Under the pieces are notes generated by a model. It worked only from the letters and a program-made list of their open reading frames with translations, made no database searches and was not told the DNA's origin. Shown in pieces: positions 7,560 through 48,336 of a stretch of 64,000 nucleotides of DNA; position 1 is the stretch's first letter; each line of letters begins with the position of its first letter. The stretch spans positions 186,001 to 250,000 of IMG/VR virus record IMGVR_UViG_3300027896_005002, one strand, 5' to 3'. Both the position numbers and the translations under genes were made by a program.

Positions 7560-8294
7560 TTATTTTTCCCAACTTTCCCAACTTTGTTGTGCTTTGCCTG
7601 TCAGATTTTTATACAAATTACATTTTCCGCATTTCATAGATTTAATATTTGATACTAATTCTTGATCTGTCGAATCAACATCACCAATTTTATAACAACT
7701 ATTACATTCACCAACAACAATTGAACCATCAATATTAATTGACGGCACACACATTTTTGCCATTTTAAATCGTAAATACATTATCGCAGTTTTAAAATTG
7801 TCAAAATAATGAATAAGCGACCGCAAATTAAAACATAAAGGACTTTGTCTTGTACATAATATATTATTTGTTAATGCACGACCAAATGGTGATACAAGCA
7901 ATAAATTATTGACGTAATTTAAATTTTCATTATTAACAAATTTTATACGTTGAGGATAATATCTAGAATCATTAGTAATTTGAAAAGTAACATTTGATTT
8001 TAGTATTTCATCTGAATAGTCTTCATTATTCAAAAACATTCCATTTGAAGCTACTAACAATGTTATAATTTTTTTACTTTCAATATAAGTTTTAGCAATA
8101 CTAACAAAATCTAAAAATTGTGGATGTTCTGTAGGTTCTCCGCCTGATAAAAAGATCATTGTTGGATCAAATTTCATAACAAATTCTAAACATTTTATAT
8201 ATGTTTGAGCAGACATATGTTTACCATCAGGCGTAGAATTTATCATGCAATGAGAACAATTCATTCTACATGCATTAGTTATTCGTATTAGCAT
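7560..8294 (-). CDS. Radical SAM protein
   Basis: ITNACRMNCSHC (CxxxCxxC), LSGGEPTEHP, SNG, C-terminal Cys cluster (SPASM/twitch-like). Confidence 0.85.
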   Translation of the reverse strand: MLIRITNACRMNCSHCMINSTPDGKHMSAQTYIKCLEFVMKFDPTMIFLSGGEPTEHPQFLDFVSIAKTYIESKKIITLLVASNGMFLNNEDYSDEILKSNVTFQITNDSRYYPQRIKFVNNENLNYVNNLLLVSPFGRALTNNILCTRQSPLCFNLRSLIHYFDNFKTAIMYLRFKMAKMCVPSINIDGSIVVGECNSCYKIGDVDSTDQELVSNIKSMKCGKCNLYKNLTGKAQQSWESWEK

Positions 8295-8351
8295 ATATGT
8301 TTAATCAATTTGTAAAACGTAGAAACTGTGTGGTGATTAGGCGGCAATTAC

Positions 8352-9263
8352 TTAAAGTTCTACTTCCATACCTTCTTTAGCTAATATTATATTTAGATTT
8401 TCATATAGTCTATTATTCCACCAATTTTGAATAGTATCTAAAAAATCATCGGTATGTTTTGGATTATAATGAATACAATATAATTTCTTTACATTTGCTT
8501 GCATAGCGTTGTCTATAGCCATAGCATACGAACTATGACCAAATCCTTGCACAATCATTTTATCACTATTATATTCATCAGCTGTATACTGAGTATCATG
8601 AATCATAACATCACAATTTTTAGCAAAATTGATAACAGCTTTGTCACCACCAATTTTTGATTCATTGTCCCAAATACAAGCAACAGTCTTATCTGTTATT
8701 AAACTTTTTATTTTATAATATAAAGCACCTTGTTGTGGATGAGACGGTGCAAATGCTTGCATCACATCTACAGTAAATAAATTAGTTTGTAAAACTGATT
8801 TTCTAGTATAAGTATCTCCATCATTCATAATCTTACAGAGTCTTTCACTTTTGAGATGTTTGTATTCGATTGGAAATTGAGGTGGTAACATTGTTTTTGA
8901 TAAAATAATTTCTACATTTTCATTAAGAGATTCCATACCTAACATGTCAATTTTTGCTCCATGAAAATGATTAGGAGCAAAAAACGGAAAACCTTGCGTA
9001 TGGTCAGGATGTAAATGTGTAAAGAATATTGGAAAAAATAAAAGTTCTTTCTTTTCAAAAAAATTGGATATAATATCTTGTCCCAATTTTATTATACCTG
9101 TACCGGCATCAACAATAATTCTGTAAATCCTACCATCATATTCTTCTGAAAACGACACGCATGTAGTATTTCCACCATATCGTACAGTGTCGGGTCCTGG
9201 AACTGGATAACTGCCACGAGTACCATAAAATTTAATTTTCATTTTAATTTCCTTTTTTATCAA
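8352..9263 (-). CDS. Metallo-beta-lactamase-fold hydrolase (RNase Z / cyclic-nucleotide phosphodiesterase-like)
   Basis: GTRGSYP, YGGNTTC, DAGTG, THLHPDH, HDTQY, GHS, HYNP. Confidence 0.85.
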   Translation of the reverse strand: MIKKEIKMKIKFYGTRGSYPVPGPDTVRYGGNTTCVSFSEEYDGRIYRIIVDAGTGIIKLGQDIISNFFEKKELLFFPIFFTHLHPDHTQGFPFFAPNHFHGAKIDMLGMESLNENVEIILSKTMLPPQFPIEYKHLKSERLCKIMNDGDTYTRKSVLQTNLFTVDVMQAFAPSHPQQGALYYKIKSLITDKTVACIWDNESKIGGDKAVINFAKNCDVMIHDTQYTADEYNSDKMIVQGFGHSSYAMAIDNAMQANVKKLYCIHYNPKHTDDFLDTIQNWWNNRLYENLNIILAKEGMEVEL

Positions 9264-9467
9264 AGACTTCTACAAATTCATTTTTACAATTTTTTTTAAA
9301 AATATGTCCATTTACTCCTGCATAAATATTATCATTTATAACATTTATACTATACCAATTTCTATGAGCGAATAATAAAGTACCACAATATCGACATTGA
9401 GTAGTAGTACTAACTAATTCAAAAAAATTACATACTGGACACTTAACTCTTTGTTCATTTAACATAT

Positions 9468-10007
9468 TCATTTTTTTTCAATTGATAATTTTATGTCTGA
9501 AAATTCCAAATGCATTGATTGTGCTTTAAATTTTGTTAAAACAGTTCTTGCGGCTCCAATAAAGGCAATTAACAATTCTGGATTATCTTCAACTAATGAG
9601 AATTCTTTGAAACTTGGTAATGTTTCTGATTTGACTTTGTTAGATTTTGGCTGTTTAGACTCTGGACTTTTTGACACACTAGATTTTCTTTTATTATAAG
9701 GATATTTGATAGCATTGCATGTATCACATCGTATTTGTCTACCTTTACGTTCAAATGGATTTTGACAATCTACACAAATTGTTGTTTTTGAAGATTCTTC
9801 ATTTTTAGTCATTGATTCCTCCTTTTGAGAATCTATATTTTCAAGTGGTTGTAATGCAAAAGTACCTATTTTATGTGTGGGCATAATTAAACATGAATTA
9901 CAAGTAGTCTGTGATTCTATTACAGTTGAAAATGGTTGCCTGCATTTATCACAGATTTTTTCTCTTTGTATGTTGAGTTCTACTGGTTTTTTATAACTCC
10001 TCATCAT
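9468..10007 (-). CDS. Hypothetical protein with two CxxC...CxxC Zn-ribbon repeats
   Basis: CDKC..CNSC and CVDC..CDTC. Confidence 0.5.
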   Translation of the reverse strand: MMRSYKKPVELNIQREKICDKCRQPFSTVIESQTTCNSCLIMPTHKIGTFALQPLENIDSQKEESMTKNEESSKTTICVDCQNPFERKGRQIRCDTCNAIKYPYNKRKSSVSKSPESKQPKSNKVKSETLPSFKEFSLVEDNPELLIAFIGAARTVLTKFKAQSMHLEFSDIKLSIEKK

Positions 10008-10936
10008 ATAAATCGTTTACATCCAGTCGTAGGACGAATAAAAGATATTTGACAATTACTTTTGTCTATTATACGTTTATCATAAAATTCACATTTATTA
10101 TTCTGACAAGGCTTAATTTCTTCCAACGATTGTTTAATTTTTTTACATTCAGGATGATGACTTTTTTCACCAATTGCCATATCAGTTAAATACCATTCTC
10201 CATTTGCACCTTTTAAGAAATCTAATGACCAATAACCACTAAATAATTTAGCTACATATGTAGCCATTTTAATAAGTTCATTTTCGTCATCATTAGATAA
10301 TGAAGCCATTTCATCAAATAATTTTTCGTCTATATCATTTTCAAAAGCTTTTCTATCCCAATAATTATGATGACATTCTATCTTACCATTACGTACAAAA
10401 AATCTTCGTTCCTTCGTTATAGGCATTTCACCTATAAAATAATGAAAATATGGTTCAGTTTTAATAAATTCACGAACAGCCCAAAAATCAAAAGGAATTA
10501 CTCTATCAATTGTAGCTATACAACTCATATAAAGTAGATTGTGCACGTGATTTAGTAAAGTATCAGATGTATGACTTAATAAAGTACTTTCATTTTCAAT
10601 AGTTTTTTCATTAATATAACAAGAATTTTTCCAATCATGTTTATTACTTAAATGTCCTGTTCGTAAAAATGCAGGTAATCCAACCTCAATAACTGCATTT
10701 TTTAAATCGGACATAAACTGTCCGAGGCCTTCAGGATTCTTATTGTCAAACAAGTCAATAAGTTGAACATTAGTATGAATGATTATTGTCTTTGGCATAG
10801 GAAAACTTAATCTGTAAAGTCTAGGATACCAAAATGTAATACAATTCATAGCATCGCATGTATCACAAACATCATCATTTACTATCATTTCATTTGAATT
10901 GAATTCATTATTACATCTAATACAACGTTTTTTCAT
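10004..10936 (-). CDS. ATP-grasp-fold protein (phage R2K-like)
   Basis: FLRTG..S.KH.W, VREFI, ERRFFV, WSLDF, WYLTDM. Confidence 0.6.
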   Translation of the reverse strand: MKKRCIRCNNEFNSNEMIVNDDVCDTCDAMNCITFWYPRLYRLSFPMPKTIIIHTNVQLIDLFDNKNPEGLGQFMSDLKNAVIEVGLPAFLRTGHLSNKHDWKNSCYINEKTIENESTLLSHTSDTLLNHVHNLLYMSCIATIDRVIPFDFWAVREFIKTEPYFHYFIGEMPITKERRFFVRNGKIECHHNYWDRKAFENDIDEKLFDEMASLSNDDENELIKMATYVAKLFSGYWSLDFLKGANGEWYLTDMAIGEKSHHPECKKIKQSLEEIKPCQNNKCEFYDKRIIDKSNCQISFIRPTTGCKRFI

Positions 10937-11175: not shown

Positions 11176-11652
11176 CCTATTGCAATTACTACTATTAATA
11201 ATAATAAAGCAATGTAAAAATAATATAATTTGTCAGGAATATCCATTAATTATGCTTCATAAAAAAGATTTCATACATTATTTATACTAACTAAACCAAT
11301 TGCCCTGACTATCCTGCAAAACATGCTTGCCACAACGACGACAATCACCATTTCTTGAACAACCATCAAAACCAATGCCTGTTGGTGCTTTATGCCATCC
11401 AAATGTATTACAAAACCACACATTTTTTGAAAACGTACTTATAATTGCAAGAATGAATAATACTGTAATAAGAAAAAATAAAATAAAACTAAAATAAGTT
11501 GTCATCATCAATTTTAACCCCTGATAATTGTTCAAGCACTTTGAGTCTTTTATTTAAATTTGCAAGCTGTTTTTCTATTAACACAAACTTTGCAGATATA
11601 CAAATAAATAAAATTATAGCAATTCCAATAATAACATACATTGTATAATCCA

Positions 11653-12831
11653 TTAAAACCGTTTTGGATCGTTCTTTTTAACTGAAGTTGAAGTTGAAGT
11701 ATTAAGTAATTTATCAAATTGAATTGAAAGACCAAGTTGTAGCATTGCTCCAAGATAAACTGTTTCTTGAGGTCCTGCTGTTATTTTCGGAAGATCAATG
11801 ATGGATAACATGAATCGAGTGATATTTGATTCAAGTCGTACATAATCTGCCGAAATATCGATGTTTAGCATTTTGAGCATTTGATCACGGTTAACAGCTC
11901 CGAGAGCGGCAGGAAGTGCAGTATTTTCCAAAACTGTTTTAATACTATGTGCTTCATATGCAAGCGCCCTTGCAATAGGAATGCCAAAACCGGCAAAGAT
12001 TTTATTAATTACATTAATAACAGTTTCAGCAGAGTCTCTTACAGCTGAAGCATCGGGTGGTGCCATCATAGGAGCCATTAAATTATTTGGAGAAAGAGCT
12101 GCCATAATTGCGCTGGTTATTGCAGCAGGATTAGACCCACCTTGTATCCATGCTTGTTGCCAAGCTGAAAGTTGTTTGTAAAAATCACTGAGTGTTATCC
12201 AAAGTTTGTCATCCAATTTTGTCAAGAAACTTTTCTTTCGAGTTTGTGTTACAAAAGAACCTTCAATACCTAATACTGATAATACATCAGCATAGTTCCT
12301 TTTGATGACTAAATTACGAAGAGTGAAATATTCTGTGCCACAAGGAATTTCGTTACTTTCAGCAAAATTCTCCATTTTATCTTTGATAACATCAATGATA
12401 TCGAATAAGCCAAGCCTGTTTGCAATTGCCGATCTCATTGCGCAAATTATTTCCATTGGTCCAACTTTTAATTCTCCACCTGTTTTGAGAGCTTTAATAA
12501 AACTCTCATCATCAGGTAATGACGGCAAAACATCCAAAGAAAAAGAAGCTGACGATGTTGGTGCTATCGGTGGAACAGCCTTTGGTCCACGTAGTAAATT
12601 TACATTCTTTTTCAAAACACCACTCGGAATTTTGAGTGCTGCAAGCGCATTTTTAATATCTTCAAATGATGCAGCTTCTTCATCAGCCAATATCATCAAA
12701 GCATCATCACTTGGAGAGCCTACCACTGTTAATAATGCTTCATTAACATCACTTAAATTCTTGTTAACTGCTTTTGCAAAAGCACCAACTTTTGTGTCCC
12801 AACCTTCAGGCACTTTGATTTCTTCACTCAT
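11653..12831 (-). CDS. Hypothetical protein, third gene of vWA / kinase-NadM operon
   Basis: 392-aa helical ORF, ATGA overlap with the upstream kinase gene. Confidence 0.6.
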   Translation of the reverse strand: MSEEIKVPEGWDTKVGAFAKAVNKNLSDVNEALLTVVGSPSDDALMILADEEAASFEDIKNALAALKIPSGVLKKNVNLLRGPKAVPPIAPTSSASFSLDVLPSLPDDESFIKALKTGGELKVGPMEIICAMRSAIANRLGLFDIIDVIKDKMENFAESNEIPCGTEYFTLRNLVIKRNYADVLSVLGIEGSFVTQTRKKSFLTKLDDKLWITLSDFYKQLSAWQQAWIQGGSNPAAITSAIMAALSPNNLMAPMMAPPDASAVRDSAETVINVINKIFAGFGIPIARALAYEAHSIKTVLENTALPAALGAVNRDQMLKMLNIDISADYVRLESNITRFMLSIIDLPKITAGPQETVYLGAMLQLGLSIQFDKLLNTSTSTSVKKNDPKRF

Positions 12832-14513
12832 ACAACCTCCTGTTTAAAGTAAATTATTTCATCATCACCATCAAATTCTGTTTTATTATAGGAAAATTGA
12901 ACTATATTATTATTCCATTGTACAATTGTGTTTTTTGAATAAGGATCTATTATTTTGCAAATATCATCAGTGTCGTTAATTGCCTGAATTAAACTTTCTT
13001 CAGGTGTTGAATATCTTGTTACATGAACTGAATATAATAATGTCTTAAAACATGATGGATCATCATTTAATAAAAGAACTGCTTTTACTATACCTGGAAC
13101 AAATTCAATGTTTGGTTTACCATACATTATTCGTAATTCTGCAAATGACAGAATCTTTTCAACTCCCATAGCAGCATAATCTTGAAAAGTACGATAATCA
13201 TTATTTTTGACAGAATTCCTAATTATTTCTCCCCATGATTTGGGTATACCATCATACTCTGTACAAAATAAATGTTTTTGTTCTATAATGGGCATTTCCA
13301 TATCTGAAAATAATTCATGGACATCAGGATTACTTGATGCTACAGTTATTAATTTTTCTTTTTCGGGCATCATAGCAAAATGCATTCGTAATTCTTTTTC
13401 AGTTTTGTAAAAAGGTGTCAAATAAAATTTAAAATCATCTTTTGAATAACCTAATTCAAGCAAAGATTGAGCGACCATTTTCATCACTAGCCATTTAGGT
13501 ATTGGATCACGATCTGTTATTGTATATGATCGTTGTATTGAAATTATGAGCTTATAGCCCAAATCAAGAATACGCGTCATATATTTAATATGACCACTAT
13601 GAGGAATACCCATCCGTGCAGGGAATAAAACATATTTGTCACTTGAAGATTTTATTCCTCGATGTTTGATATATCGATATGTTTGATTTTCTAAATATGA
13701 ATTAGTAAATACTTCTGTACACGTTTTAAGTGTTGGTCGTTCAACAGGATTTAATTTTAACATTTTTGAAATAATTACAAATTCATCTTTTACATTAGCT
13801 TCTTTCGATAAAGTTGGATAATGTCTATCGGCACATTCGCACAAATCCATAGTTCTAGGTTCAAATGGTGTTGTATCAAATGGATGTATACCTGTAAAAA
13901 GCTCATGTGCAATTATACCAAGTTGGAAGACTATTGATTTTTCACTAACTATATGATTAAATACGGTTTCAGGTGCAGCATATCGAGGATGTGAAATTAT
14001 ACCAATTTGTTCAGTATCATTTGTTTTTAATTGAGTAAGACCCAAATCAATTATATACACATTACTAATAGAAATTAAAACATTTTCAGGCTTTATATCT
14101 AAATATAGTATTTGTTTTTTATGAAGTAATTCTATTTTTAAAATTAATGTACCTAAAATAAAAGATACATCGTTTGGTAACAATAAATTATCAGGTTGAC
14201 AATAGTTTGCCAACGACTGACCATATGTAAAAGAAGTTTTAATAAACTTATTACCGTCAATATCAACAGTACCATAATATTGAGGTAAGAGTGGAACAGG
14301 ATGATTTACTAAATACTCATATAATTCATCTTCATTTAAATAATCTCGAAGATCTTTTTTGTAATTATAAACTTCTTTTAATATTTTGAAAATACCATCT
14401 GTGTCACGTATTAATAAAACAGTCGACCTTTTTTCATGAACACTTTCGAAGCTTTGCTGTAATACAGAAATTAAAGAAATATTGTGAAGTTTACACCATT
14501 GATTATAATTCAT
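12828..14513 (-). CDS. Ser/Thr protein kinase fused to NadM/NMNAT-like (HxGH) nucleotidyltransferase
   Basis: Kinase: YLDIKPEN, IDLG, YAAPE, GIHPF. C-half: FPARMGIPHSGH, RDPIP, SSNPDVHELF, WGEIIRN, paralleling NadM GRFQPFHxGH / NPF / SNNPLV / SGTxIR. Confidence 0.75.
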   Translation of the reverse strand: MNYNQWCKLHNISLISVLQQSFESVHEKRSTVLLIRDTDGIFKILKEVYNYKKDLRDYLNEDELYEYLVNHPVPLLPQYYGTVDIDGNKFIKTSFTYGQSLANYCQPDNLLLPNDVSFILGTLILKIELLHKKQILYLDIKPENVLISISNVYIIDLGLTQLKTNDTEQIGIISHPRYAAPETVFNHIVSEKSIVFQLGIIAHELFTGIHPFDTTPFEPRTMDLCECADRHYPTLSKEANVKDEFVIISKMLKLNPVERPTLKTCTEVFTNSYLENQTYRYIKHRGIKSSSDKYVLFPARMGIPHSGHIKYMTRILDLGYKLIISIQRSYTITDRDPIPKWLVMKMVAQSLLELGYSKDDFKFYLTPFYKTEKELRMHFAMMPEKEKLITVASSNPDVHELFSDMEMPIIEQKHLFCTEYDGIPKSWGEIIRNSVKNNDYRTFQDYAAMGVEKILSFAELRIMYGKPNIEFVPGIVKAVLLLNDDPSCFKTLLYSVHVTRYSTPEESLIQAINDTDDICKIIDPYSKNTIVQWNNNIVQFSYNKTEFDGDDEIIYFKQEVV

Positions 14514-15529
14514 TTTACTAATATTTTTTTCATCAATGCATCAATTTCTTTTTGAGGTCTTTCAATATATTTCCCAAATCGTTGTATCATGTCCTGAGCT
14601 CGTTGATCAGTTTCATTTCCAAAAATCGGTTCTTTCAACCATTTTTCATAAAGAAATGACAGAAATAATTCAACACCTTGCATACCAGTATTTCGAGCGA
14701 TAAGAAAGAGTAAAGCATTACCTGTTATAGCAGCTCTGTGTGCAAATTCTTTGATTGATGAAAGATCAATAAGATCGAATGGTACACGATCATCTTTTAA
14801 AAATTGTGTCTGTAATTTACCATTAGTGGCATCCTCACCACAACCAATGACAGTAAATGTAGTAAAAGTTTTATATACCGCTTCTTTTGATTTTCTCCAA
14901 TCACGTTGATGAGGACATCCGTCATCAGATTCCATGCCCATTCCATGACCAACAACATCTGTTGCCAAATATAAATGTTTTTCTTTTGCATTGCCAAAAT
15001 TTAAACCACAAGCATCCCAAAGAGCACATTCCCATGCTTCGGCTCCGTCATAACCATTTGCAGGTAATACATTTTTGCATGAAGAGTATAATGCTTTATC
15101 TGCTTTTTTTCCGGGCTTGAGATAATCAATCGATTGAATGAATTTATCTTTGTCTCCATGATCACTACAGTACATAAAAGCAATTTGTGAAGAAGCATCT
15201 AATTGTTCAAGAACACTTATCAAGTAACCTGAGCTTTCTCTGAGATGTTGGGCAATTTTTGCATTTGATCCCGAGTTGTCAATTAATACAATATGTAATC
15301 GTTCAACATTTGCATCAGGTTTCGTAATATTTCTTGTAACTAAACTTTCATCATAAAGATCATCAGTTTCTCTTTTCTCTCGAGGTTCTGCTGATTTAAT
15401 ATGAACTTCATCACGAGCAGACTTAACTGACTTGGCTCTTTCTTTATAATAAGTATCACTATCACTACTTAAACTAGATCTACTTCTGCTCAAATACGAG
15501 CTGTAATCTTCATAAGATTTTCCGCTCAT
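14510..15529 (-). CDS. von Willebrand factor A (vWA) domain protein
   Basis: MIDAS-like LIDNSGSN, DH, GYDGAEAWE, LATD; Ser/Tyr-rich N-terminus. Confidence 0.65.
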   Translation of the reverse strand: MSGKSYEDYSSYLSRSRSSLSSDSDTYYKERAKSVKSARDEVHIKSAEPREKRETDDLYDESLVTRNITKPDANVERLHIVLIDNSGSNAKIAQHLRESSGYLISVLEQLDASSQIAFMYCSDHGDKDKFIQSIDYLKPGKKADKALYSSCKNVLPANGYDGAEAWECALWDACGLNFGNAKEKHLYLATDVVGHGMGMESDDGCPHQRDWRKSKEAVYKTFTTFTVIGCGEDATNGKLQTQFLKDDRVPFDLIDLSSIKEFAHRAAITGNALLFLIARNTGMQGVELFLSFLYEKWLKEPIFGNETDQRAQDMIQRFGKYIERPQKEIDALMKKILVK

Positions 15530-15559
15530 AATTTTTCCTTACTATTTAAAGTTGAAAAA

Positions 15560-15699
15560 CTTAGAAGAACTGGACTCTCTCTATGCACCTGGGCTATGTG
15601 TATAGCCATGATTCACTCCATAGATTTCCCAGGTAGAGCCTTCATGCTTTTTGTGCCGATACATGAACACTACATATCGTTGCAATCAGTTCTTCTAAG
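15560..15699 (-). ncRNA. Putative 140-nt structured RNA element upstream of the vWA operon
   Basis: Perfect 13-bp closing inverted repeat cttagaagaactg/cagttcttctaag; internal stems acctggg/cccaggt, ggctat/atagcc, ttcatg/catgaa. Confidence 0.5.
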
Positions 15700-15710
15700 G
15701 TTTGTATCAT

Positions 15711-16826
15711 TTAATCTTCAGCTGCAACTATTTCTGATTTGTCAAAGACTCTGTAACGTAAGGCTATTCCTCTCGCAATGACCAATCTATTCCAGATTTT
15801 TTTCTTTCCAGGAAGAATATAACCACGTTCCCATTTAGCATTTTGTATCCAAGCCGGCATTTTTTCACCGTCATTGCTATTGAGAAAGAATGCATATTCA
15901 GTTGCTCTTGCAGCAAACCGTAATTTTGGAATAATTGAATATGTATATGACCGTGCAGTATCTTCAACAGCTTTTAATAATAATGATTGATCTTTTTCGG
16001 AGAATAATTTTGAAACAACAAATTCGCCTGTTATATCCGGATGATCAACTTCTGCTTCAAAAGCTTTTATTTTAATACTTTCTCCTTTGCCGACAACAGT
16101 CTTTTTTGGCCATTCTTTCTTTTCTGCACCGCCACCGCCGATTTTAACACCACGTTTCCTCATCATTTCTGCAGTGTCTTTGAGAAATTTTGCTTCTTCG
16201 GTTAAACGATCAATTAAAGCTTTTGTGATAAAATAATACTGACCGTAGAGAGACACCCAACGATTTGGGTGAACAAAATTTTTGAAAACAACTGAATTGC
16301 CTGACCAAAGACTATTATTAGTCAAAAAATCATTTTCTTTTGCATTTGGCACAAATTCAACCGCTTTCCAACCATCATACCATTTTCCATCAATATCAAC
16401 CAGCATAAAGTTTCGAAAATCACCTACTGAATCTGTTGTCATGACATTTGCGTCATTAATTCTGATAGAAAATGAAAAGTTTTCTTTGTTTGCAGAAAGA
16501 CCTAAAATCTTTCCATGTCGATTGTCTTTTGAAACAACAGTTTGACCTTCTGCTATTTGCGCCGGCCTTCTGCTTTTGTATTGTGGAATATTAATGACTG
16601 CTCCTCTTTCTGCAAGAGCAAATAAAAAAGCAGCCAAGTCAAGGTCTGTTCCAACAAAAATACCATCATCTGTATAAGCTGCACCTGGTTTACGTGTAAA
16701 TAAATCATAACTCCAATAATCAGTCAATCTTTCAATAACAGGTTTTACTGACTGGCCTTTATCGATAATCAACTGCATCTCGTCAGTATTAAGAACATTG
16801 ACCAACGTTCCGGCAATTTTCTTCAT
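15711..16826 (-). CDS. Hypothetical protein
   Basis: 371-aa ORF with AGGAG RBS; no family recognised. Confidence 0.6.
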   Translation of the reverse strand: MKKIAGTLVNVLNTDEMQLIIDKGQSVKPVIERLTDYWSYDLFTRKPGAAYTDDGIFVGTDLDLAAFLFALAERGAVINIPQYKSRRPAQIAEGQTVVSKDNRHGKILGLSANKENFSFSIRINDANVMTTDSVGDFRNFMLVDIDGKWYDGWKAVEFVPNAKENDFLTNNSLWSGNSVVFKNFVHPNRWVSLYGQYYFITKALIDRLTEEAKFLKDTAEMMRKRGVKIGGGGAEKKEWPKKTVVGKGESIKIKAFEAEVDHPDITGEFVVSKLFSEKDQSLLLKAVEDTARSYTYSIIPKLRFAARATEYAFFLNSNDGEKMPAWIQNAKWERGYILPGKKKIWNRLVIARGIALRYRVFDKSEIVAAED

Positions 16827-17041: not shown

Positions 17042-17959
17042 TCATATTGATTTAAAATACCATTGTCTACTATATGCTGTGTCAAAATCAGACCATTCAC
17101 TATTTTGTCTTTGTTTTAATTCATCAAATCGTGAACAATAACTATTAATCATGTCACTAAAATGCAAAATTACTGCTTCTTTCATTAAAGGCTCAATTGG
17201 CGCTCCCCATTCTTTTTTACCATGATGTGATAATAATAAATGAACTAATTCTGCAAATTTCTTAGGTGGAACGTTATCAGGTAAAAGTTTTGTGATGATG
17301 ATGATGCCTAGTGTTGTATGGCCTACAAGTTTACCTGGCGTTGAGCGATCAAAAGATTTGTCATAAGTATATTCTTTTATTTTGCCAATATCATGTAATA
17401 AAGCACCAGTAATTAGTAAACTGTAATTTAAATTTTCAGGTGATGAATTATGTATTGATGAACATAATTCAGCTACTTCGATAGAATGTTTAAACAATCC
17501 GCCAATATGTGCTTGATGATTACTTTTAGCTGCAGGTGCTTTTATAAAATCATCAAACACATTATAATTTACACTATCAATAATAGAACTAAAATGTTCA
17601 TCAGTAATAGATTTGCAAAGTTTTGAATATCTAGTTTTCAGATTTTCAAATTCTTCTTTTGTTATTGATGGAAGGTTAATTGACTTTTCTGTTTTAGAAA
17701 TTTTGATAACATCAATTTTGCGATTGTTATTAAATTCACCAACATGGCCTTTTAATAAAACAATATCATTTTGTTGAACTTCATCACCGTCGTCGTATCT
17801 ACAAACTTGAATATCCCAAATAAAGGCACTTATATCATTTTGACCATCATTAATTGTTAATTTAATGAAGTCTTCTAATTTTTTTGTTTTTTGTTTTGCA
17901 ATTGATTTAACGACGACAACAGCGGAAACTGTGTCGCCGACTTGAAACTTATCAATCAT
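17042..17959 (-). CDS. yhaM: YhaM/Cbf1-like OB-fold + HD 3'-5' exoribonuclease
   Basis: N-terminal OB fold; PAAKSNHQAHIGGLFKHS, LLHDIGKIKEY, GH, SHHG..EWGAP, LHFSD. Confidence 0.85.
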   Translation of the reverse strand: MIDKFQVGDTVSAVVVVKSIAKQKTKKLEDFIKLTINDGQNDISAFIWDIQVCRYDDGDEVQQNDIVLLKGHVGEFNNNRKIDVIKISKTEKSINLPSITKEEFENLKTRYSKLCKSITDEHFSSIIDSVNYNVFDDFIKAPAAKSNHQAHIGGLFKHSIEVAELCSSIHNSSPENLNYSLLITGALLHDIGKIKEYTYDKSFDRSTPGKLVGHTTLGIIIITKLLPDNVPPKKFAELVHLLLSHHGKKEWGAPIEPLMKEAVILHFSDMINSYCSRFDELKQRQNSEWSDFDTAYSRQWYFKSI

Positions 17960-19244: not shown

Positions 19245-20693
19245 TTACTTATCCATTTCAATTAAATAAGTAAGAGTTTGTTGATTTAAATTGGGAACAA
19301 TAAATTCATCATTGTAAAGTGATGATCCACCTTTAGCCCAAATACTATTAAAACCGGATGGAACTCCACTACAAGATGACCGAACTTCATAAAATTTTCC
19401 TAATAAAACATCTGCAATAAATAGAAACACATTGTTACTTCTTGATCTATTTGATGAATTCCAGAAATTTGTAGAATAATTTAATGATTTTGTGCTTGCA
19501 CTTGCAAAGTATATTCCATCGCCAAAAGCTCGTCCACTAAAAGTTGGGCAATTGCATGGAGGAATTATAAGTCCATTTTTCATAATACTAAGAATATTGC
19601 AGTTTTTAGACCCATGAAATAATTCCCTTTTATTGTCGTATTTTGTTTTTGTTGATTCGTATCTTGCTCTTTCATGAGGTATTTTAATTTTAAAGATATT
19701 CTTTATTTTATAGAACCAAACATCAGCTCCTTGATGATTTCGGGCTTTTGACGTTTCAACATATGTTTTTATTCGTTCAAATTCTTTTGTATCTATTAAT
19801 TCTTCAATTTCAACACCTATTGCATTTAATTTTTGTGAAGCATTTTTATTTAATGCAGCACCCATTTGGACAGCAGATTCAAGTTGTTCAAGAAGATCAT
19901 ATTCCTGCATTAATTTATTATCATCCAAAATCCAGTCACTTTCTTGAATTTTGCGACCAAACTGATGAGGAATTAATGAAAAATATAAATTGTTGTTAGT
20001 TCTTACAATTTGTGAATCATTATTTAATTTACTATTTTTCAATTGTGTTTTTAAAGAATCAAGAGCAGTCTGTGCTTTTTTAACTTGATCTTTTGTAATT
20101 GGTCCTAAAGGCGTTTCTAATCCATTTGATGTTAATGTCAATGTAGTTAAAGATGTAATATTGTGAATATTTTCTTCAACAATTTGATCAATGATTCTTA
20201 CAATTTTTTGATTTTTAATAGTTGATGTATCAATTGCTGCTTTTTTTGTTGAAGTAATTTGTACAGATTTGTCTCGAATGTTTGAAGAACCTACTTTAGG
20301 AGAGAATGTTTGCACTTCTTCGTAGTTTTCTCTACGGCTATCGGATAAGCCTCTATCGTCTTTAATACTTTTTCCTCGAAGTTTGCTCTTTATAATTGAA
20401 TCAAATTCATTTTCAACAACTGACATATCTGTGATCGGTCTATTAGTATTTTCATCAATGTCTCTGACACCAAAGACTTCTGATAATCCTAATCGACCAT
20501 AATGAGAGAATAAACGATACCAACCTATTTTTGGATTATGTTGAAGTTCTAAGCAATAGAATTTATTGTTATTGCCCTCAACATTGCCGCAATGTAAGAC
20601 CTTGAATTTTTTAGTTTCTGTAAAACCGCATTTTTGAGGATCATAATCATAACCTCCGGGCTTCACTTTACGTTCTTTGAATTTTGCAGCCAT
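19245..20693 (-). CDS. WGR + helical regulatory + catalytic poly(ADP-ribose) polymerase (PARP)
   Basis: NNNKFY..HYGRLG (WGR); TPLGPIT..YFSLIPH (regulatory domain); FHGS, FGDGIYFA, KSLNY, NDEFIV (H-Y-E triad). Confidence 0.88.
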   Translation of the reverse strand: MAAKFKERKVKPGGYDYDPQKCGFTETKKFKVLHCGNVEGNNNKFYCLELQHNPKIGWYRLFSHYGRLGLSEVFGVRDIDENTNRPITDMSVVENEFDSIIKSKLRGKSIKDDRGLSDSRRENYEEVQTFSPKVGSSNIRDKSVQITSTKKAAIDTSTIKNQKIVRIIDQIVEENIHNITSLTTLTLTSNGLETPLGPITKDQVKKAQTALDSLKTQLKNSKLNNDSQIVRTNNNLYFSLIPHQFGRKIQESDWILDDNKLMQEYDLLEQLESAVQMGAALNKNASQKLNAIGVEIEELIDTKEFERIKTYVETSKARNHQGADVWFYKIKNIFKIKIPHERARYESTKTKYDNKRELFHGSKNCNILSIMKNGLIIPPCNCPTFSGRAFGDGIYFASASTKSLNYSTNFWNSSNRSRSNNVFLFIADVLLGKFYEVRSSCSGVPSGFNSIWAKGGSSLYNDEFIVPNLNQQTLTYLIEMDK

Positions 20694-44748: not shown

Positions 44749-47700
44749 TTACCCGCACCGCGAGTCTCCACATTGCAGGCATTTGTAGCATCCGCCTTCC
44801 ATAATAACTGAATTTTCTGCTCCGCAAGCTTCACATTTCATACTAATTACTGTTCCATCTTTTATTGTTAACGATATGAATTTTCTAACAGCCGTCAACA
44901 AACTTGAAATATTGTCACCCTCAATGTTTCGCAATGCAATTAATATATCTTCTCGTTTGATGTTGTGTCTTAAACAAAGTGAAATCATGCGTCCCAATCT
45001 ATTGTAAGAATAATCTACTTTCGCTTTGTCAATACACTGTTGAATTATTGAATTATCAACTCCTTTCTCAATTGCTAATTGTGCTAATTTTCTAGACGCT
45101 TTATTACAAACTTTAACCTGGCCAATTTCTCTGCTATTACTATATATCCACAAACATATTGGATATTTCATGTCAGTATCTTCGGGCAAGAAACTAAAAT
45201 GTATGTAGAATTTTTGACCTTCTCTTTTTATAATTCTTGTTGGTCCATTTAAAAATACTTCTGGAAGTTTAATGTCTCTTTTAATGATTTTTTGTTCTTT
45301 GTTAGCTTCTTCTAAACTGGAGATTACCGATTCCATACAACCGTCTCTATAGGTCGTAAAACCATTTAATCCCCGTTTCCAAGCATCAATATATAATTGT
45401 TTAAAATTTTCAAAAGGAAAGTCATGAGGTACATTACAGGTTTTAGAAACTGACTGATTACAATAATATTGAACAACTTCTTGAATATTGAGATGATCTT
45501 CAGTCTTTAAATCTTTTGTAGTTACTAAATAAGCAGAATGATCTTTATCTGGAAAGTTATCTAATAGCCATTGATAACCATAATCTCTTACAATGTTTAC
45601 TTCACATAATCCTCTATTATGAGGTTCATAATAATATATTTTACCGTTATAAGACCCTCTCCAATATTCAAAATCTTTCTTTTTGTGATATTTCAAAACA
45701 TCTTTTACATTATCATCACTTAAACCTTCAGGCCACAAACCACATATTACAATACGTTCATATTCTAATGAAAAAACTGGTTCAATAGCATTTGACACAT
45801 TATTACAAACTATAGAACTATTTCCTAATGGTGGATTTGTGGTCGTTTTAGCATTTCGTACACCATGCTGAATTATTAATTCTTTTGTTTTATTCCACAA
45901 TCTGTCAGATAAAAAATATTCTGTATTTTGAAATTTTTCAGTATTATATGCTGTAAATGTTCCTTTTTCTTTTGCTAACAATGCCGATGCTTGCCATACA
46001 AGATTTTCCTTCAATTCACATATTTTCTTTGTAAATTTTATAGCCTCTTTTGAATTATATGACATTCCCAACATAAATAATGCCGATCCCAAACCATTAA
46101 TTCCCATACCAAATTGACGAAAATTTCTTACAACATATTCATATGATGGTAATGGCAAATTAGTCAAATCATTAACATTATCTAACATTCTTGCAAAAAT
46201 GCCTATATCATAAGCATACTGATCAATATCAAATTGTGGTTTCCCATCTTTATCAATATAAATATATTGAGTAATATTCAATGATCCAAGTAGGCAGACA
46301 GTTGTAATTGATGATAATCCGCCGATTTCTCCGCAATTTTTAACAAATATGCCACTACTTTGTAAATATCTATCATCATCAAATGATGTAATAACTGCAT
46401 AATTATGATTGTCATCAACTGTAATATTATAAACATCTTCATAACCATAAAACTCAATACTTTTTACTTTATGATTAGCTTCAGCAATTCTTTCAGCTGC
46501 TTTAAACATTTTACTCATTGTAGCATAATTTAAATTTTCAAGTCTATATTTTGAAAATGTTGGTAATTTATTAGTTTTTAATCTTTGTATTATTTCTCGT
46601 TTGCATGGTGATTTTTTATATTTAATTTTAAAATTTTTAATTATTTCTATAATTTTATTGAAATAATCTTCATTAGATATTTTAGCAGCTCTACCATTTT
46701 TTAATCCCGACACAGCTTCACTCATATTTTTATGATATCGTTCGGGATCTTTTATTCTTTTTGGAAAATCATACATTGGATTTTTTTTACCACTAATATC
46801 ATGAACCATATCATGTTCTTCAACCGTCATTTTCTTCAAATTTTCAGGTCGATCATTATAATGATTAAAATCATCATGATGTATTCTATGTAATTTAGAA
46901 TCAATTAAATCATTAGGATAGTAAAATTCATATATTAATCTATATTGTCGTCTGCTTAAACATAATCCTGAAGATTTTTTTAATTTTGATGACTGAGCTA
47001 TTTGTCTATAAGTAGTATGTCCATAACTTATATAAGAATCAAAAGGAACAATACTGTCACCAGGTATTAAATCTTTTAGATTAATCTCAGTACCTTTACT
47101 AGAACATATTTTGTGATCAGGAGTAGCAATAAAATAAGAATTATCATCTAATGTTAATTTCCATACTTCTTTCTTTTCGCCTGTTTTTCGTGGATTTCGA
47201 CCCATTTTAATTTCAACAGCGCCTGTAGAAAAATTTCTTGAATATACAGGAACATCTTTAGCTTCTTCAGCTAATTGTTTAAAAGTCACACCATTTCTTC
47301 CATCAGCGACAGCTGCTATTGATGAACCAATTACACATGGATTTGTTGTGTCGCATTTACCGAGATATGCTAGCGGATTATTTCTGTGCATGTTGTCAAC
47401 AAATAATACTCCAGGTTCTGCTCTATTATATGTTGACTGCATTATCAAGTCATATAGTTCTCTTGCTTTAATTCTTTTGTAAACTTTACCTTTAAAATGA
47501 AGATCATATAAATCATCGGCAACAACTGCTTCCATGAATTTATCATCAATTAAAACTGATAAATTGAATTTTGTTAAAACTCCTGAAGATTGTTTTACAC
47601 GAATAAATTCTTCAATATCAGGATGATGACACGGTAAGACGCCCATCATAGCACCTTTTCGTGTCTGCCTCTTCATTATGTTTTTTAATTCATCAAATTG

Positions 47701-48336
47701 TTGTACAGTTAAATGATTTTTTAATTTGTCAACATACCCATCATCAGTTCCTTTAACCATACATTCTGAAACTGTGTCCCATAATTTTGCATAGGATAAA
47801 ACACCTGGATGTCTAATTCCAGTGCCTTTGATTACTGCATTTCGAGGTCTAATAAAACCTAAATTTATTCCATAACCGCCTTCAGAAGCCAGTGTTTTGG
47901 CTTGTTCCATTATTGTCAAGAAAATATTTGTGAGATCATCTGGATTATCATCTGTTTCAATATCAACATCATAAATTACAGATTTATCTTCAGTTTGTCG
48001 TTTATATTTTATTGATGCACCAGAAACAGGTCCATTAATAAAACAATTCATTAATGTAGCATTTTTATAATCTGTTCCTAAATTGGCAGTTATTCTACCA
48101 CCTAAAGTCACTTTAAGACCCATAGGTTCTTTATTAGGATAACCATTATCATCAACATCGAAATCGCCATCAAATTTTAGTAGAGTTTGTAAAAAGGGCT
48201 TGTACCATTTTTGGGGATCTTTTTCAACAGATGCAAGAGTTTTTGCACATCTTATAAAAGTTTCAAGTTCTGATTCATTTTTATACTGATACTTCTTCTC
48301 CCAATTCTCTTTTGCAAGTGATGTTTTGAAAATCAT
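44749..48336 (-). CDS. nrdJ: Class II (AdoCbl-dependent) ribonucleotide reductase with intein
   Basis: NCF, GGYG, RKGAMM, HPDIEEFI, FNLSV, AEPG, TNPC/CGE, CLLGSLN, QSVSKTCN, C-terminal Zn ribbon; no R2 gene in window. Confidence 0.88.
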   Translation of the reverse strand: MIFKTSLAKENWEKKYQYKNESELETFIRCAKTLASVEKDPQKWYKPFLQTLLKFDGDFDVDDNGYPNKEPMGLKVTLGGRITANLGTDYKNATLMNCFINGPVSGASIKYKRQTEDKSVIYDVDIETDDNPDDLTNIFLTIMEQAKTLASEGGYGINLGFIRPRNAVIKGTGIRHPGVLSYAKLWDTVSECMVKGTDDGYVDKLKNHLTVQQFDELKNIMKRQTRKGAMMGVLPCHHPDIEEFIRVKQSSGVLTKFNLSVLIDDKFMEAVVADDLYDLHFKGKVYKRIKARELYDLIMQSTYNRAEPGVLFVDNMHRNNPLAYLGKCDTTNPCVIGSSIAAVADGRNGVTFKQLAEEAKDVPVYSRNFSTGAVEIKMGRNPRKTGEKKEVWKLTLDDNSYFIATPDHKICSSKGTEINLKDLIPGDSIVPFDSYISYGHTTYRQIAQSSKLKKSSGLCLSRRQYRLIYEFYYPNDLIDSKLHRIHHDDFNHYNDRPENLKKMTVEEHDMVHDISGKKNPMYDFPKRIKDPERYHKNMSEAVSGLKNGRAAKISNEDYFNKIIEIIKNFKIKYKKSPCKREIIQRLKTNKLPTFSKYRLENLNYATMSKMFKAAERIAEANHKVKSIEFYGYEDVYNITVDDNHNYAVITSFDDDRYLQSSGIFVKNCGEIGGLSSITTVCLLGSLNITQYIYIDKDGKPQFDIDQYAYDIGIFARMLDNVNDLTNLPLPSYEYVVRNFRQFGMGINGLGSALFMLGMSYNSKEAIKFTKKICELKENLVWQASALLAKEKGTFTAYNTEKFQNTEYFLSDRLWNKTKELIIQHGVRNAKTTTNPPLGNSSIVCNNVSNAIEPVFSLEYERIVICGLWPEGLSDDNVKDVLKYHKKKDFEYWRGSYNGKIYYYEPHNRGLCEVNIVRDYGYQWLLDNFPDKDHSAYLVTTKDLKTEDHLNIQEVVQYYCNQSVSKTCNVPHDFPFENFKQLYIDAWKRGLNGFTTYRDGCMESVISSLEEANKEQKIIKRDIKLPEVFLNGPTRIIKREGQKFYIHFSFLPEDTDMKYPICLWIYSNSREIGQVKVCNKASRKLAQLAIEKGVDNSIIQQCIDKAKVDYSYNRLGRMISLCLRHNIKREDILIALRNIEGDNISSLLTAVRKFISLTIKDGTVISMKCEACGAENSVIMEGGCYKCLQCGDSRCG
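46336..47337 (-). mobile_element. Intein (334 aa) with HNH-type endonuclease in RNR active site
   Basis: TTNP|CVIGS...ATPDHK...RIHHDDFNHYNDRPENL...DVYNITVDDNHNY...FVKN|CGE. Confidence 0.88.

What the first reader, a model, noticed from the sequence alone, without database searches (positions are those of the whole stretch)
11653..15529. vWA / kinase-NadM fusion / unknown protein: translationally coupled three-gene module
The three genes are joined by ATGA overlaps. The middle gene fuses a Hanks-type kinase (DIKPEN, DLG, APE) to a NadM-like HxGH nucleotidyltransferase, an architecture I do not recognise. vWA+kinase operons are known in Ter/TerY stress systems, and phage NMN adenylyltransferases rebuild NAD+ depleted by Thoeris/SIR2-type defences. 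Inference: a phosphorylation-controlled NAD+ (or other nucleotide-transfer) counter-defence or signalling system.
Basis: partly seen in the sequence, partly recalled or inferred. Interest (0 to 1): 0.75.

Follow-up and report, generated by a model that had tools for sequence, protein, structure and literature searches.

The report
vWA, kinase-NMNAT-like fusion, helical partner operon
A huge phage carries a tightly coupled three-gene operon, shared only with a few Patescibacteria, whose central protein fuses an active-looking protein kinase to an NAD-synthesis-type adenylyltransferase domain; this combination is not described in the literature I could search, and it sits among NAD/ADP-ribose genes.

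Summary
Three minus-strand genes (15529-14510, 14513-12828, 12831-11653) are joined by two ATGA overlaps. Gene 1 is a divergent vWA protein with an intact MIDAS-like site and a disordered Ser/Tyr/Arg-rich N-terminal tail. Gene 2 is a Hanks-type kinase with all catalytic residues, fused to a HIGH-superfamily nucleotidyltransferase whose only detectable relatives are archaeal NMNAT and NadM, followed by a small beta domain. Gene 3 is a confidently modelled all-alpha protein with no structural relative.

The module recurs. In 20 of 22 representative genome loci, mostly labelled Patescibacteria, the vWA gene lies just upstream of the fusion, and 15 also carry the third gene. At least four other large phage-like contigs keep the window's gene order. 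The fusion is rare: 136 hits among 1.84 billion protein representatives, and none in 50,697 GenBank phages.

Context points to NAD/ADP-ribose. A PARP gene lies 4.7 kb upstream here and 2.8 kb away in a related contig that also has NADAR. Some bacterial loci carry NrtR and NadE-NadD.

The simple "NAD+ rebuilding counter-defence" reading is weak. The phage has its own pncB, nadD and nadE, the module is native to cellular genomes, and two NMNAT-conserved residues are lost. My best guess is a kinase coupled to adenylyl transfer or nucleotide sensing, with vWA as dock or substrate. Function remains inferred.

The parts
14510..15529 (-). Gene 1 (P0001, 339 aa): divergent vWA protein. Residues 1-73 (15311-15529) form a disordered Ser/Arg/Glu/Lys-rich tail with conserved S2, S5, Y9, Y59 and T69. 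Residues 74-324 (14558-15310) form the vWA fold.
15266..15280 (-). MIDAS-like D84-N-S86-G-S88 loop of the vWA protein. It is invariant in 72 homologues, together with D161 (GGD in place of GGT) and D191 (TDV in place of TDG).
   Evidence: invariant columns; the motif equivalence rests on my knowledge of vWA MIDAS sites
15536..15540 (-). AAGGA ribosome-binding site 7 nt upstream of the gene 1 ATG. It is preceded by a roughly 180-nt intergenic gap (15530-15710).
14510..14513 (-). ATGA overlap between the gene 1 stop and the gene 2 start.
12828..14513 (-). Gene 2 (P0002, 561 aa): Hanks-type kinase fused to an NMNAT/NadM-like nucleotidyltransferase and a C-terminal beta domain.
13674..14513 (-). 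Kinase domain, residues 1-280. K43/K46, E61, D139, N144, D156 and P181-E182 are conserved in 90-100% of 95 homologues. There is no canonical Gly-rich loop.
   Evidence: Z 22.8 to PknB and 23 to PDK1 and PIM1
13104..13646 (-). HIGH-superfamily nucleotidyltransferase domain, residues 290-470. The family motif is FPARMGIPHxGH (R300, H305, H308 invariant), with DRDPIPKW, SSNP and S426-W-G428...R432.
12831..13103 (-). C-terminal beta-rich domain, residues 471-561, of unknown fold family. It occupies the position that the Nudix domain holds in NadM.
   Evidence: secondary structure, pLDDT above 90; only weak MutS_I hits
12828..12831 (-). ATGA overlap between the gene 2 stop and the gene 3 start.
11653..12831 (-). 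Gene 3 (P0003, 392 aa): soluble all-alpha protein. The AF2 model has pLDDT 87, and no structural relative is found outside its own family.
11489..11653 (-). Tentative fourth ORF (54 aa, one hydrophobic N-terminal helix). Its ATG overlaps the gene 3 stop (TAATG). It was not seen to be conserved in relatives.
   Evidence: it is absent at this position in the contig
19245..20693 (-). Context gene: PARP-like enzyme (WGR, PARP regulatory and PARP catalytic domains), on the same strand 4.7 kb upstream. A 49%-identical copy lies 2.8 kb from the module in the related contig L031.

Best explanation
This is a translationally coupled operon for a cytoplasmic signalling and nucleotidyl-transfer module. 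A clade of huge phages acquired it from Patescibacteria.

The core enzyme is a catalytically competent Hanks-type Ser/Thr kinase. It is permanently fused to an NMNAT/NadM-derived HIGH nucleotidyltransferase domain that keeps its ATP-handling residues.

The vWA protein is encoded immediately upstream. It has an intact MIDAS site and a conserved hydroxyl-rich disordered tail, and it is the obligate partner. It is most likely the docking subunit, the phospho-acceptor, or both. The all-alpha third protein is a frequent accessory subunit.

I think the module most likely couples protein phosphorylation to synthesis or sensing of an adenine dinucleotide, NAD+ or a close analogue. In the phage it would then tune NAD+ supply or ADP-ribosylation (the neighbouring PARP) during infection, rather than simply refilling NAD+.

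Shown: gene structure, folds, conserved catalytic residues, obligate fusion, co-occurrence and context.

Inferred: physical association, the substrate of either domain, and the link to PARP and NAD+.

The confidence given (0.4) is for the functional reading. The structural description alone I would put at about 0.9.
For: Fusion and folds.

Residue conservation: kinase residues are conserved in 90-100% of 95 sequences. R300, H305, H308, D336, K340, Q412, S426, G428 and R432 are invariant.

Obligate fusion: 136 profile hits at E <= 0.001 among 1.84 billion representatives, 99 of them at E <= 1e-30. Nearly all of these strong hits sit at the C-terminus of kinase-length proteins (500-790 aa) or are fragments. 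All ten weaker, outgroup-like hits that I scanned are NMNAT or NadM.

Partnership: vWA lies directly upstream of the fusion in 20 of 22 genome loci, and the third gene is present in 15 of 22. The order vWA, fusion, third gene is kept in the window, in the contig, and in L030, L031 and L032.

NAD/ADP-ribose context: PARP in the window and in L031, and NADAR in L031. NrtR and a NadE-NadD fusion sit in Falkowbacteria-type and related loci. The phage genome also has pncB, nadD, nadE, NADAR and PP2C.

Origin: the short phage-type forms (24 of 27) form one well-supported clade nested among the long Patescibacteria forms.

Precedent, from my own knowledge: eukaryotic NMNAT1 binds PARP1 and is regulated by phosphorylation.
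Against: No biochemical data exist for any member.

The Asp after strand 4 (P-D) is present in 13 of 14 NMNAT/NadM outgroups but is Phe or Tyr in this family, and the Trp about 7 residues later is not kept. In E. coli NadD a highly conserved active-site Asp, D109, is needed for activity (PMC1249556). If the two positions are equivalent, which is my inference, canonical NMNAT chemistry may be impaired.

Scores lie far below the NMNAT family cut-offs: 25.5 bits against 127.

PARP was absent from the four bacterial genomes and the one IMG/VR viral contig carrying the module that I searched; the search tool's own controls also found no PARP, so it warns that this does not show absence. The PARP link is therefore phage-specific at best. 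NAD genes flank the module in only about 5 of 22 loci, and those come from two lineages.

The complex prediction for kinase fusion plus vWA gave no verdict.
Confidence: 0.4

Rival explanations
1. The fusion is a consecutive-step small-molecule enzyme, following the logic of NadR, RibF and HldE. The kinase domain phosphorylates a hydroxyl of a nucleoside-like metabolite such as nicotinamide riboside. The fused HIGH domain then adenylylates that phosphate to give NAD+ or an analogue. The vWA and helical proteins are accessory. This is the closest version of the first reader's NAD+-making idea.
For: Kinase plus HIGH-adenylyltransferase fusions that catalyse successive steps are a recurrent theme: NadR RNK-NMNAT and NARP3 (PMC13464706), and FAD synthetase (PMC3509593). 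The two domains here are essentially never separated. The full-length model is compact, with pTM 0.92. A uridine-kinase-like gene, a PurA-like gene and NAD genes flank some bacterial copies.
Against: The kinase is a full protein-kinase fold with a conserved APE motif and C-lobe. It matches Pkinase at E 7e-24 and gives Z 23 against protein kinases. To my knowledge, small-molecule kinases of this superfamily usually lack these features. The NMN-pocket Asp and Trp are not conserved. The phage already has a full Preiss-Handler set. No NR transporter lies nearby.
Confidence: 0.15
2. The NMNAT-like domain is a non-catalytic sensor. It binds NAD+, NMN or ATP and allosterically gates the kinase, which phosphorylates the vWA protein or other targets. 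The module would then report NAD+ status.
For: The Asp and Trp conserved in true NMNATs are lost. The domain scores far below the NMNAT cut-offs. It is rigidly packed against the kinase in the model. Sensor domains derived from enzymes are common in signalling proteins (my own knowledge).
Against: Both His residues of HxGH, the upstream Arg and the S...R motif are invariant across about 95 sequences at 33-74% identity. Such residues usually decay in non-catalytic paralogues of HIGH enzymes (my own knowledge).
Confidence: 0.2
3. The module is a mobile conflict system, either defence or superinfection exclusion. The vWA protein senses an invader peptide, the kinase relays the signal, and the nucleotidyltransferase and/or the helical protein acts as effector. 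In this reading it is unrelated to NAD+ supply.
For: The distribution is very patchy: 1 of 401 sampled genomes of the phylum and 7 of 127 in one family. The module is present on phages. vWA plus kinase pairs occur in known conflict systems, and the best PADLOC kinase hits are the Mad6 and PD-T4-6 kinases. The third protein's top, weak fold hits are ClyA-type pore formers.
Against: The PADLOC hits cover only the generic kinase domain, and the vWA protein, the third protein and the NT domain have none. The third protein has no hydrophobic segment, and Z 6 is within noise for helical proteins. There is no nuclease, protease, TIR or SIR2 effector. In bacteria the neighbours are metabolic genes, not defence islands.
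Confidence: 0.15
4. The two domains make a new protein modification. The kinase phosphorylates a Ser, Thr or Tyr, for example in the vWA tail. The HIGH domain, whose chemistry is always attack by a phosphate-type oxygen on an NTP alpha-phosphate, then adenylylates that phosphate to give a protein-O-ADP adduct.
For: This is chemical logic from HIGH-enzyme mechanisms combined with the obligate fusion to a protein-type kinase. The NMN pocket is altered. The adjacent vWA protein has a conserved hydroxyl-rich disordered tail.
Against: I know of no precedent for protein substrates in this superfamily. There is no direct evidence, and the complex prediction gave no verdict.
Confidence: 0.07

Closest known systems
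NadM / archaeal NMN adenylyltransferase (e.g. PDB 1ej2, 1hyb; NCBIfam NF002243, TIGR01527)
   Same: Same HIGH Rossmann-like fold. The GRxxPxHxGH-type motif, DP, SxN(P) and S...R motifs align. These are the only families detected by HMM, by profile against the PDB, by exhaustive profile search and by structure.
   Different: Scores are far below the family cut-offs. The post-strand-4 Asp and the following Trp are replaced. The domain is fused to a protein kinase at its N-terminus, and a beta domain takes the place of the NadM Nudix domain. Hexamer formation and activity are untested.
NadR / phage NARP3 Bas30_86 (RNK-NMNAT bifunctional enzyme; PMC13464706) and other kinase-adenylyltransferase fusions (RibF, HldE)
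   Same: A kinase activity and a HIGH adenylyltransferase sit in one polypeptide. There is phage carriage and a link to NAD+.
   Different: In those enzymes the kinase is a P-loop or other small-molecule kinase, whereas here it is a eukaryote-like protein kinase fold. The domain order is reversed. There is no PnuC transporter. There are obligate vWA and helical partners.
vWA plus Hanks-kinase signalling pairs: the TerY-P triad (vWA, PP2C, STK), T6SS PpkA (kinase with a vWA domain), Sulfolobus ArnB (vWA) with the ArnC/ArnD kinases
   Same: A MIDAS-bearing vWA protein is genetically tied to a Hanks-type kinase, so phospho-regulated protein docking is plausible.
   Different: There is no PP2C or FHA partner in the operon, no Ter genes, the kinase carries a nucleotidyltransferase, and the third protein is unrelated. 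These comparisons rest on my knowledge of those systems, plus the negative searches.
NAD-jumbo phages (PMC11662467) and viral NAD+/ADP-ribose systems (PMC9503650)
   Same: This phage also encodes pncB, nadD and nadE, plus PARP and NADAR, as described for jumbo phages.
   Different: Term searches of these two surveys found no kinase-NMNAT fusion and no vWA partner of one. No GenBank phage has a homologue.

Membership tests
Hanks-type (eukaryote-like) Ser/Thr protein kinase | Pfam Pkinase match above the gathering score | tested here: met
   PF00069 E 7.2e-24, 85 bits against 31.7, residues 43-266; VIA Z 22.8-23.2 to PknB, PDK1 and PAK4
Hanks-type (eukaryote-like) Ser/Thr protein kinase | Catalytic residues: beta3 Lys, alphaC Glu, catalytic-loop Asp and Asn, DFG Asp, APE | tested here: met
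   K43/K46 97-99%, E61 100%, D139 100%, N144 95%, D156 100%, P181-E182 99% of 95 sequences
Hanks-type (eukaryote-like) Ser/Thr protein kinase | Canonical GxGxxG glycine-rich loop | tested here: not met
   The region reads S-x-V-Y-L-x-x-D-x-D-G, with conserved D37, D39 and G40 instead
NMN adenylyltransferase (NadM / archaeal type) | (T/H)xGH ATP motif and upstream Arg | tested here: met
   R300, H305 and H308 invariant, G307 at least 90%; aligned to GRMQPFHRGH of 1ej2
NMN adenylyltransferase (NadM / archaeal type) | C-terminal SxxxxR-type motif | tested here: met
   S426, G428 and R432 are invariant and align with ISGTxxR of the outgroups, with a one-residue spacing difference
NMN adenylyltransferase (NadM / archaeal type) | Score above the curated family cut-off | tested here: not met
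   NF002243 25.5 bits against 127; TIGR01527 16.7 against 181; no Pfam CTP_transf_like hit for this protein, and only 15 of 94 members give weak hits
NMN adenylyltransferase (NadM / archaeal type) | Asp after strand 4 (P-D) and the downstream Trp that are conserved in the family | tested here: not met
   D is present in 13 of 14 outgroups and is F or Y in all 8 family members aligned; the Trp is replaced by variable residues
NMN adenylyltransferase (NadM / archaeal type) | NMN + ATP -> NAD+ activity | not testable with these tools
   Needs an enzyme assay
von Willebrand factor A (vWA) domain | MIDAS residues: DxSxS, a Thr/Asp after GG, and an Asp in the TDG-like strand | tested here: met
   D84, S86, S88, D161 and D191 are invariant in 72 sequences
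von Willebrand factor A (vWA) domain | vWA fold | tested here: met
   ESM-Atlas structure TM 0.59 by query and 0.76 by hit over residues 74-324; feature score 0.95 with 185 shared features; all ten best named hits are vWA. The model was the Atlas's own (pLDDT 0.60), not one I made.
von Willebrand factor A (vWA) domain | Pfam vWA-clan match above the gathering score | tested here: not met
   No vWA hit for P0001. About 22 weak vWA-clan hits among 72 relatives, best E 2.5e-4.
TerY-P triad / Ter stress system | PP2C phosphatase gene adjacent to the vWA and kinase genes | tested here: not met
   No PP2C among the flanking genes scanned. The only PP2C_2 hit in the genome is at C1:294149-294718, about 94 kb away.
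TerY-P triad / Ter stress system | TerD-family genes in the genome | tested here: not met
   No PF02342 match in the 416-kb record, which is 77% complete
Phage NAD+ reconstitution pathways (NARP2: NAMPT + NMNAT; NARP3: PnuC + NadR) | An adjacent NAMPT or PnuC gene, and a canonical NMNAT | tested here: not met
   The neighbours carry no NAPRTase or PnuC domain. The genome's NAPRTase gene is pncB-like and about 100 kb away, near nadE.
ClyA-family alpha pore-forming toxins (considered for gene 3) | Significant fold match and a hydrophobic membrane-insertion segment | tested here: not met
   Best Z 6.0, within the noise range the tool states for helical proteins; Foldseek E at least 0.5; maximum 19-residue hydropathy 1.34

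The most novel reading that the evidence does not exclude
The obligate fusion of a protein-type kinase to a phosphate-adenylylating HIGH domain makes a two-step protein modification. A Ser, Thr or Tyr is first phosphorylated, plausibly on the vWA partner's conserved tail. The phosphate is then adenylylated to give a protein-O-ADP adduct. This would be a previously unknown post-translational mark, used by Patescibacteria and borrowed by their huge phages.
Probability: 0.07. Interest if true: 0.9.

Novelty: new variant of a known kind. Interest (0 to 1): 0.66.

Why it matters
This would be the first link between eukaryote-like protein phosphorylation and an NAD-synthesis-type adenylyltransferase within one bacterial or phage polypeptide.

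It defines three protein families with no Pfam model (the NT variant, the vWA variant and the helical protein). They form a conserved module in the poorly understood Patescibacteria and in huge phages that also carry PARP, NADAR and a full NAD+ pathway.

Working out its chemistry could reveal one of three things: how these phages control NAD+/ADP-ribose signalling, a new NAD+-sensing kinase, or a new nucleotide-linked modification. It also gives a gene-sharing clue that a clade of 0.3-0.6 Mb phages may infect Patescibacteria.

Tried and rejected
- Complex prediction of the kinase fusion with the vWA protein gave no verdict (median score 0.00, one of three runs at 0.64). It is not evidence either way.
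- Fold searches with the full-length fusion model returned only kinases: Foldseek PDB, VIA wide and atlas. The NT domain therefore had to be judged from profiles and from the Atlas part-search.
- phmmer of the C-terminal half alone against the PDB found nothing. Only the family profile reached the NMNAT structures.
- Gene 3 had no informative match by PDB profile search, Foldseek PDB, AFDB clusters (its own family only), VIA wide (Z at most 6) or the ESM Atlas.
- blastn and tblastn against 50,697 GenBank phages gave no match.
- The promoter and terminator scan was not above the shuffled expectation.
- Terminase_6N and Terminase_6C gave no match, and the tail-sheath hit was weak and sub-threshold. 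The viral nature therefore rests on the IMG/VR and CheckV labels and on phage-like replication genes.
- A PARP search in four bacterial genomes and one viral contig carrying the module found none, but the tool's controls were also silent.
- A Macro domain was not found in the genome.
- I considered and dropped a membrane-pore role for gene 3 because it has no hydrophobic segment.
- I considered and dropped a degenerate-Nudix reading of the last domain. On inspection of the family consensus I see no Nudix-box motif, and Pfam gives only weak MutS_I hits there.

Full report
**Where the window lies.** The window is bases 186001-250000 of a 416-kb IMG/VR virus record, which CheckV rates 77% complete. 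It has about 30% GC, and almost all genes are on the minus strand. The window carries phage-type replication and nucleotide genes: ribonucleotide reductase, SbcCD-like nuclease, UvsX-like recombinase, a CCA-adding enzyme and an SLT lysozyme. The standard code (table 11) gives intact frames, so no other code is needed.

**Observation.** Three minus-strand ORFs of 339, 561 and 392 aa occupy 15529-14510, 14513-12828 and 12831-11653.
- Both junctions are ATGA overlaps.
- An AAGGA site precedes the first gene after a roughly 180-nt gap.
- The closest relative, on a 302-kb contig, has genes of 339, 561 and 397 aa with the same overlaps.

**Gene 2, kinase half.**
- Pfam Pkinase matches at E 7e-24.
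- The AlphaFold2 model built with 95 homologues has mean pLDDT 93 and pTM 0.92.
- It superposes on PknB, PDK1 and PIM1 at Z about 23.
- In the family alignment the beta3 Lys, alphaC Glu (E61), catalytic Asp (D139), N144, DFG Asp (D156) and APE (P181-E182) are 95-100% conserved. The Gly-rich loop is atypical.

This is an active-looking protein-type kinase.

**Gene 2, C-terminal half.** The protein alone gives only weak hits: NCBIfam NMNAT NF002243 at E 8e-6, far below the cut-off, and no Pfam hit. Stronger evidence comes from the family as a whole.
- A profile of 94 family members hits eight PDB sequences, all of them archaeal NMNAT (best E 0.003). FPARMGIPHxGH, RDP and SSNP align with GRMQPFHRGH, RDP and SGNP.
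- The ESM-Atlas structure search on residues 288-561 gives TM 0.78 to an archaeal NMNAT cluster, followed by NadM-type and NadR-type clusters.
- An exhaustive profile search of 1.84 billion representatives returns only 136 proteins at E <= 0.001, of which 99 are at E <= 1e-30. Nearly all of those strong hits are at the C-terminus of 500-790-aa kinase-length proteins, or are fragments. All ten weaker, outgroup-like hits that I scanned are NMNAT or NadM.

The domain is therefore NMNAT/NadM-derived and is essentially never found without the kinase.

**What is kept and what is lost in that domain.** R300, H305, H308, D336, K340, Q412, S426, G428 and R432 are invariant. An alignment with 14 outgroups shows two losses. 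The Asp after strand 4 is present in 13 of 14 outgroups but is Phe or Tyr here. The Trp a few residues later is not kept. E. coli NadD has a highly conserved active-site Asp, D109, that is needed for activity (PMC1249556). If the lost Asp corresponds to it, which is my inference, the chemistry or the acceptor substrate may differ from NMN. The last 90 residues form a confident beta-rich domain of unknown type.

**Gene 1.** There is no Pfam hit for this protein, but several lines agree on vWA.
- All ten best named ESM-Atlas feature hits are vWA (score 0.95). The structure search gives TM 0.59-0.76 over residues 74-324.
- Weak Pfam hits in relatives are all from the vWA clan.
- D84-x-S86-x-S88, D161 and D191 are invariant, which amounts to a complete MIDAS-like site. 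Extra invariant residues include S122-D-H124-x-D126, H195, D202 and C205.
- Residues 1-73 are Ser/Arg/Glu/Lys-rich, with conserved S2, S5, Y9, Y59 and T69. That these are phospho-acceptors is inference only.

**Gene 3.** There are 86 homologue clusters, none with a Pfam match and any source name only 'hypothetical protein'. The AlphaFold2 model is all-alpha with pLDDT 87. Foldseek PDB, AFDB clusters and VIA wide give nothing beyond the protein's own family. The best Z is 6.0, to ClyA-type proteins, within the noise range the tool states. There is no hydrophobic segment. Its role is unknown.

**Co-occurrence.** A scan of GTDB species representatives found 22 loci, mostly labelled Falkowbacteria, Uhrbacteria, Shapirobacteria, Minisyncoccota or Patescibacteria group. 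The four whose genomes I queried are 1.2-1.4 Mb.
- tblastn finds the vWA gene directly upstream of the fusion in 20 of the 22. The two exceptions are a 2.5-kb contig end and a fragmented copy.
- The third gene is found in 15, usually in the order third gene, vWA, fusion.
- In phage-like contigs the order is vWA, fusion, third gene: in the window, the 302-kb contig, L030, L031 and L032. L003, on a 589-kb contig, has vWA and the fusion only.
- The bacterial fusions carry an extra helical N-terminal extension of about 200 aa that the phage forms lack.
- A FastTree phylogeny places 24 of 27 short forms in one well-supported clade, nested among the long forms under midpoint rooting. This fits transfer from Patescibacteria to phage. 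The direction is inferred, not proven.

**Rarity.** The domain is found in only 1 of 401 evenly sampled genomes of the phylum, and that one is the query genome. It is found in 7 of 127 genomes of one family. There is no homologue in 50,697 GenBank phage records. Term searches of two surveys of phage NAD+ systems found no kinase-NMNAT fusion and no vWA partner of one.

**Context.**
- In the window, a PARP-like gene (WGR, regulatory and catalytic domains) lies 4.7 kb upstream on the same strand. A YhaM-like HD/OB nuclease and a conserved 371-aa protein lie between it and the module.
- L031 has a 49%-identical PARP 2.8 kb downstream of the module and a NADAR gene 2 kb upstream. L030 shares the 371-aa, HD and SLT neighbours and has a short WGR protein 8 kb away.
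- The phage genome also encodes pncB, nadE and nadD, which together form a complete Preiss-Handler route, plus NADAR and a PP2C. All are far from the module.
- In some bacterial loci the module is flanked by NrtR, a NadE-NadD fusion, a uridine-kinase-like gene, a second kinase-like gene and a PurA-like gene. This holds for only about 5-9 of the 22 loci, from a few lineages.
- PARP was not found in the four bacterial genomes or the IMG/VR viral contig tested, but the search controls were silent.

**Interpretation.** What the module is can be stated with high confidence. What it does is inferred. The obligate fusion, the retained catalytic residues in both halves and the invariable vWA partner argue for a single machine that joins protein phosphorylation to an adenine-nucleotide reaction or sensing step. 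The NAD/ADP-ribose neighbourhood in phages, and the NAD genes beside some bacterial copies, make NAD+ or a close analogue the most likely ligand.

Three points weaken it: the module's cellular origin, the phage's separate NAD+ pathway, and the altered NMN pocket. The Ter/TerY analogy fails its defining features.

The rivals are an NadR-like two-step small-molecule enzyme, an NAD+-sensing kinase, a mobile conflict system, and, most novel, a phosphorylate-then-adenylylate protein modification. The complex prediction gave no verdict.

**Verdict.** This is a real, conserved and rare module with a domain architecture I could not find described. It is a new variant built from known parts. Interest is moderately high because it is directly testable and sits at the junction of phage NAD+ biology and Patescibacteria physiology.

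Noticed in passing
window 19245-20693 (-): A PARP-like gene with WGR, PARP regulatory and PARP catalytic domains (PF00644 E 2.7e-30). A 49%-identical copy lies next to the module in the related contig L031.
   Followed up: partly
G000:C1:301495-302667 (pncB-like NAPRTase), 304295-305899 (Gln-dependent NadE), 173491-174417 (NadD); loci L028 and L027: The phage encodes a complete Preiss-Handler NAD+ route, scattered in the genome, as reported for 'NAD-jumbo phages' (PMC11662467). A GIY-YIG homing endonuclease and a radical-SAM-like gene lie between pncB and nadE.
   Followed up: partly
G000:C1:154804-155139 (within an 828-aa ORF); also L003:13201-13686: A major-vault-protein-like gene (MVP_shoulder E 8e-23) is in this phage and in the 589-kb relative. 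None of the 14 control genomes has one. Together with PARP and a vWA protein this recalls the parts list of eukaryotic vaults, but the genes are about 45 kb apart.
   Followed up: no
window 44749-48336 (-) and 60236-62644 (-): The ribonucleotide reductase large subunit (1195 aa) and the UvsX-like recombinase (802 aa) are oversized. They carry internal HNH and LAGLIDADG endonuclease matches, which suggests inteins.
   Followed up: no
window 17042-17959 (-): A YhaM-like 3'-5' exoribonuclease (OB plus HD; NF010007 E 6e-39). A similar gene lies close to the module in L003 and L030.
   Followed up: partly
window 15711-16826 (-): A 371-aa protein with no family match lies immediately upstream of the operon. 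It is 62% identical to the gene in the same position in L030.
   Followed up: partly
window 7560-10936 (-): A run of enzymes lies downstream of the module: a radical SAM protein, a metallo-beta-lactamase-fold protein, a zinc-ribbon protein and an ATP-grasp protein of the R2K clade. This may be a small-molecule or peptide-modification cluster.
   Followed up: no
window 11489-11653 (-) and 11287-11535 (-): Two small ORFs with one hydrophobic helix each follow gene 3. The first starts within the gene 3 stop codon (TAATG).
   Followed up: partly
G000:C1:294149-294718 and C1:103598-103984: A PP2C-type phosphatase (E 2.6e-11) and a NADAR domain protein (E 1e-23) are encoded elsewhere in the phage. 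The PP2C could reverse the kinase's marks.
   Followed up: no
L026 (IMGVR_UViG_3300033066_001528, 124 kb): This 'viral' contig has the bacterial gene order (third gene, vWA, fusion), followed by the same kinase-like, unknown and PurA-like genes as the Patescibacteria loci. It may be a cellular fragment filed as viral, or a phage that captured a larger block.
   Followed up: no
L007, L011, L014, L017-L019, L022 (record titles): Several MAGs titled 'uncultured Gammaproteobacteria' carry this module, which is otherwise seen in Patescibacteria. The one whose genome I sized is 1.4 Mb (L017). The titles look like placeholder taxonomy.
   Followed up: no
L005:12456-18115 and equivalents in L006, L009, L016, L017, L023, L026: A second conserved block often lies beside the bacterial module: a weak Pkinase-like 386-aa protein, an unannotated 494-aa protein, a pyruvate-kinase-barrel-like 313-aa protein and a PurA-like adenylosuccinate synthase.
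   Followed up: partly
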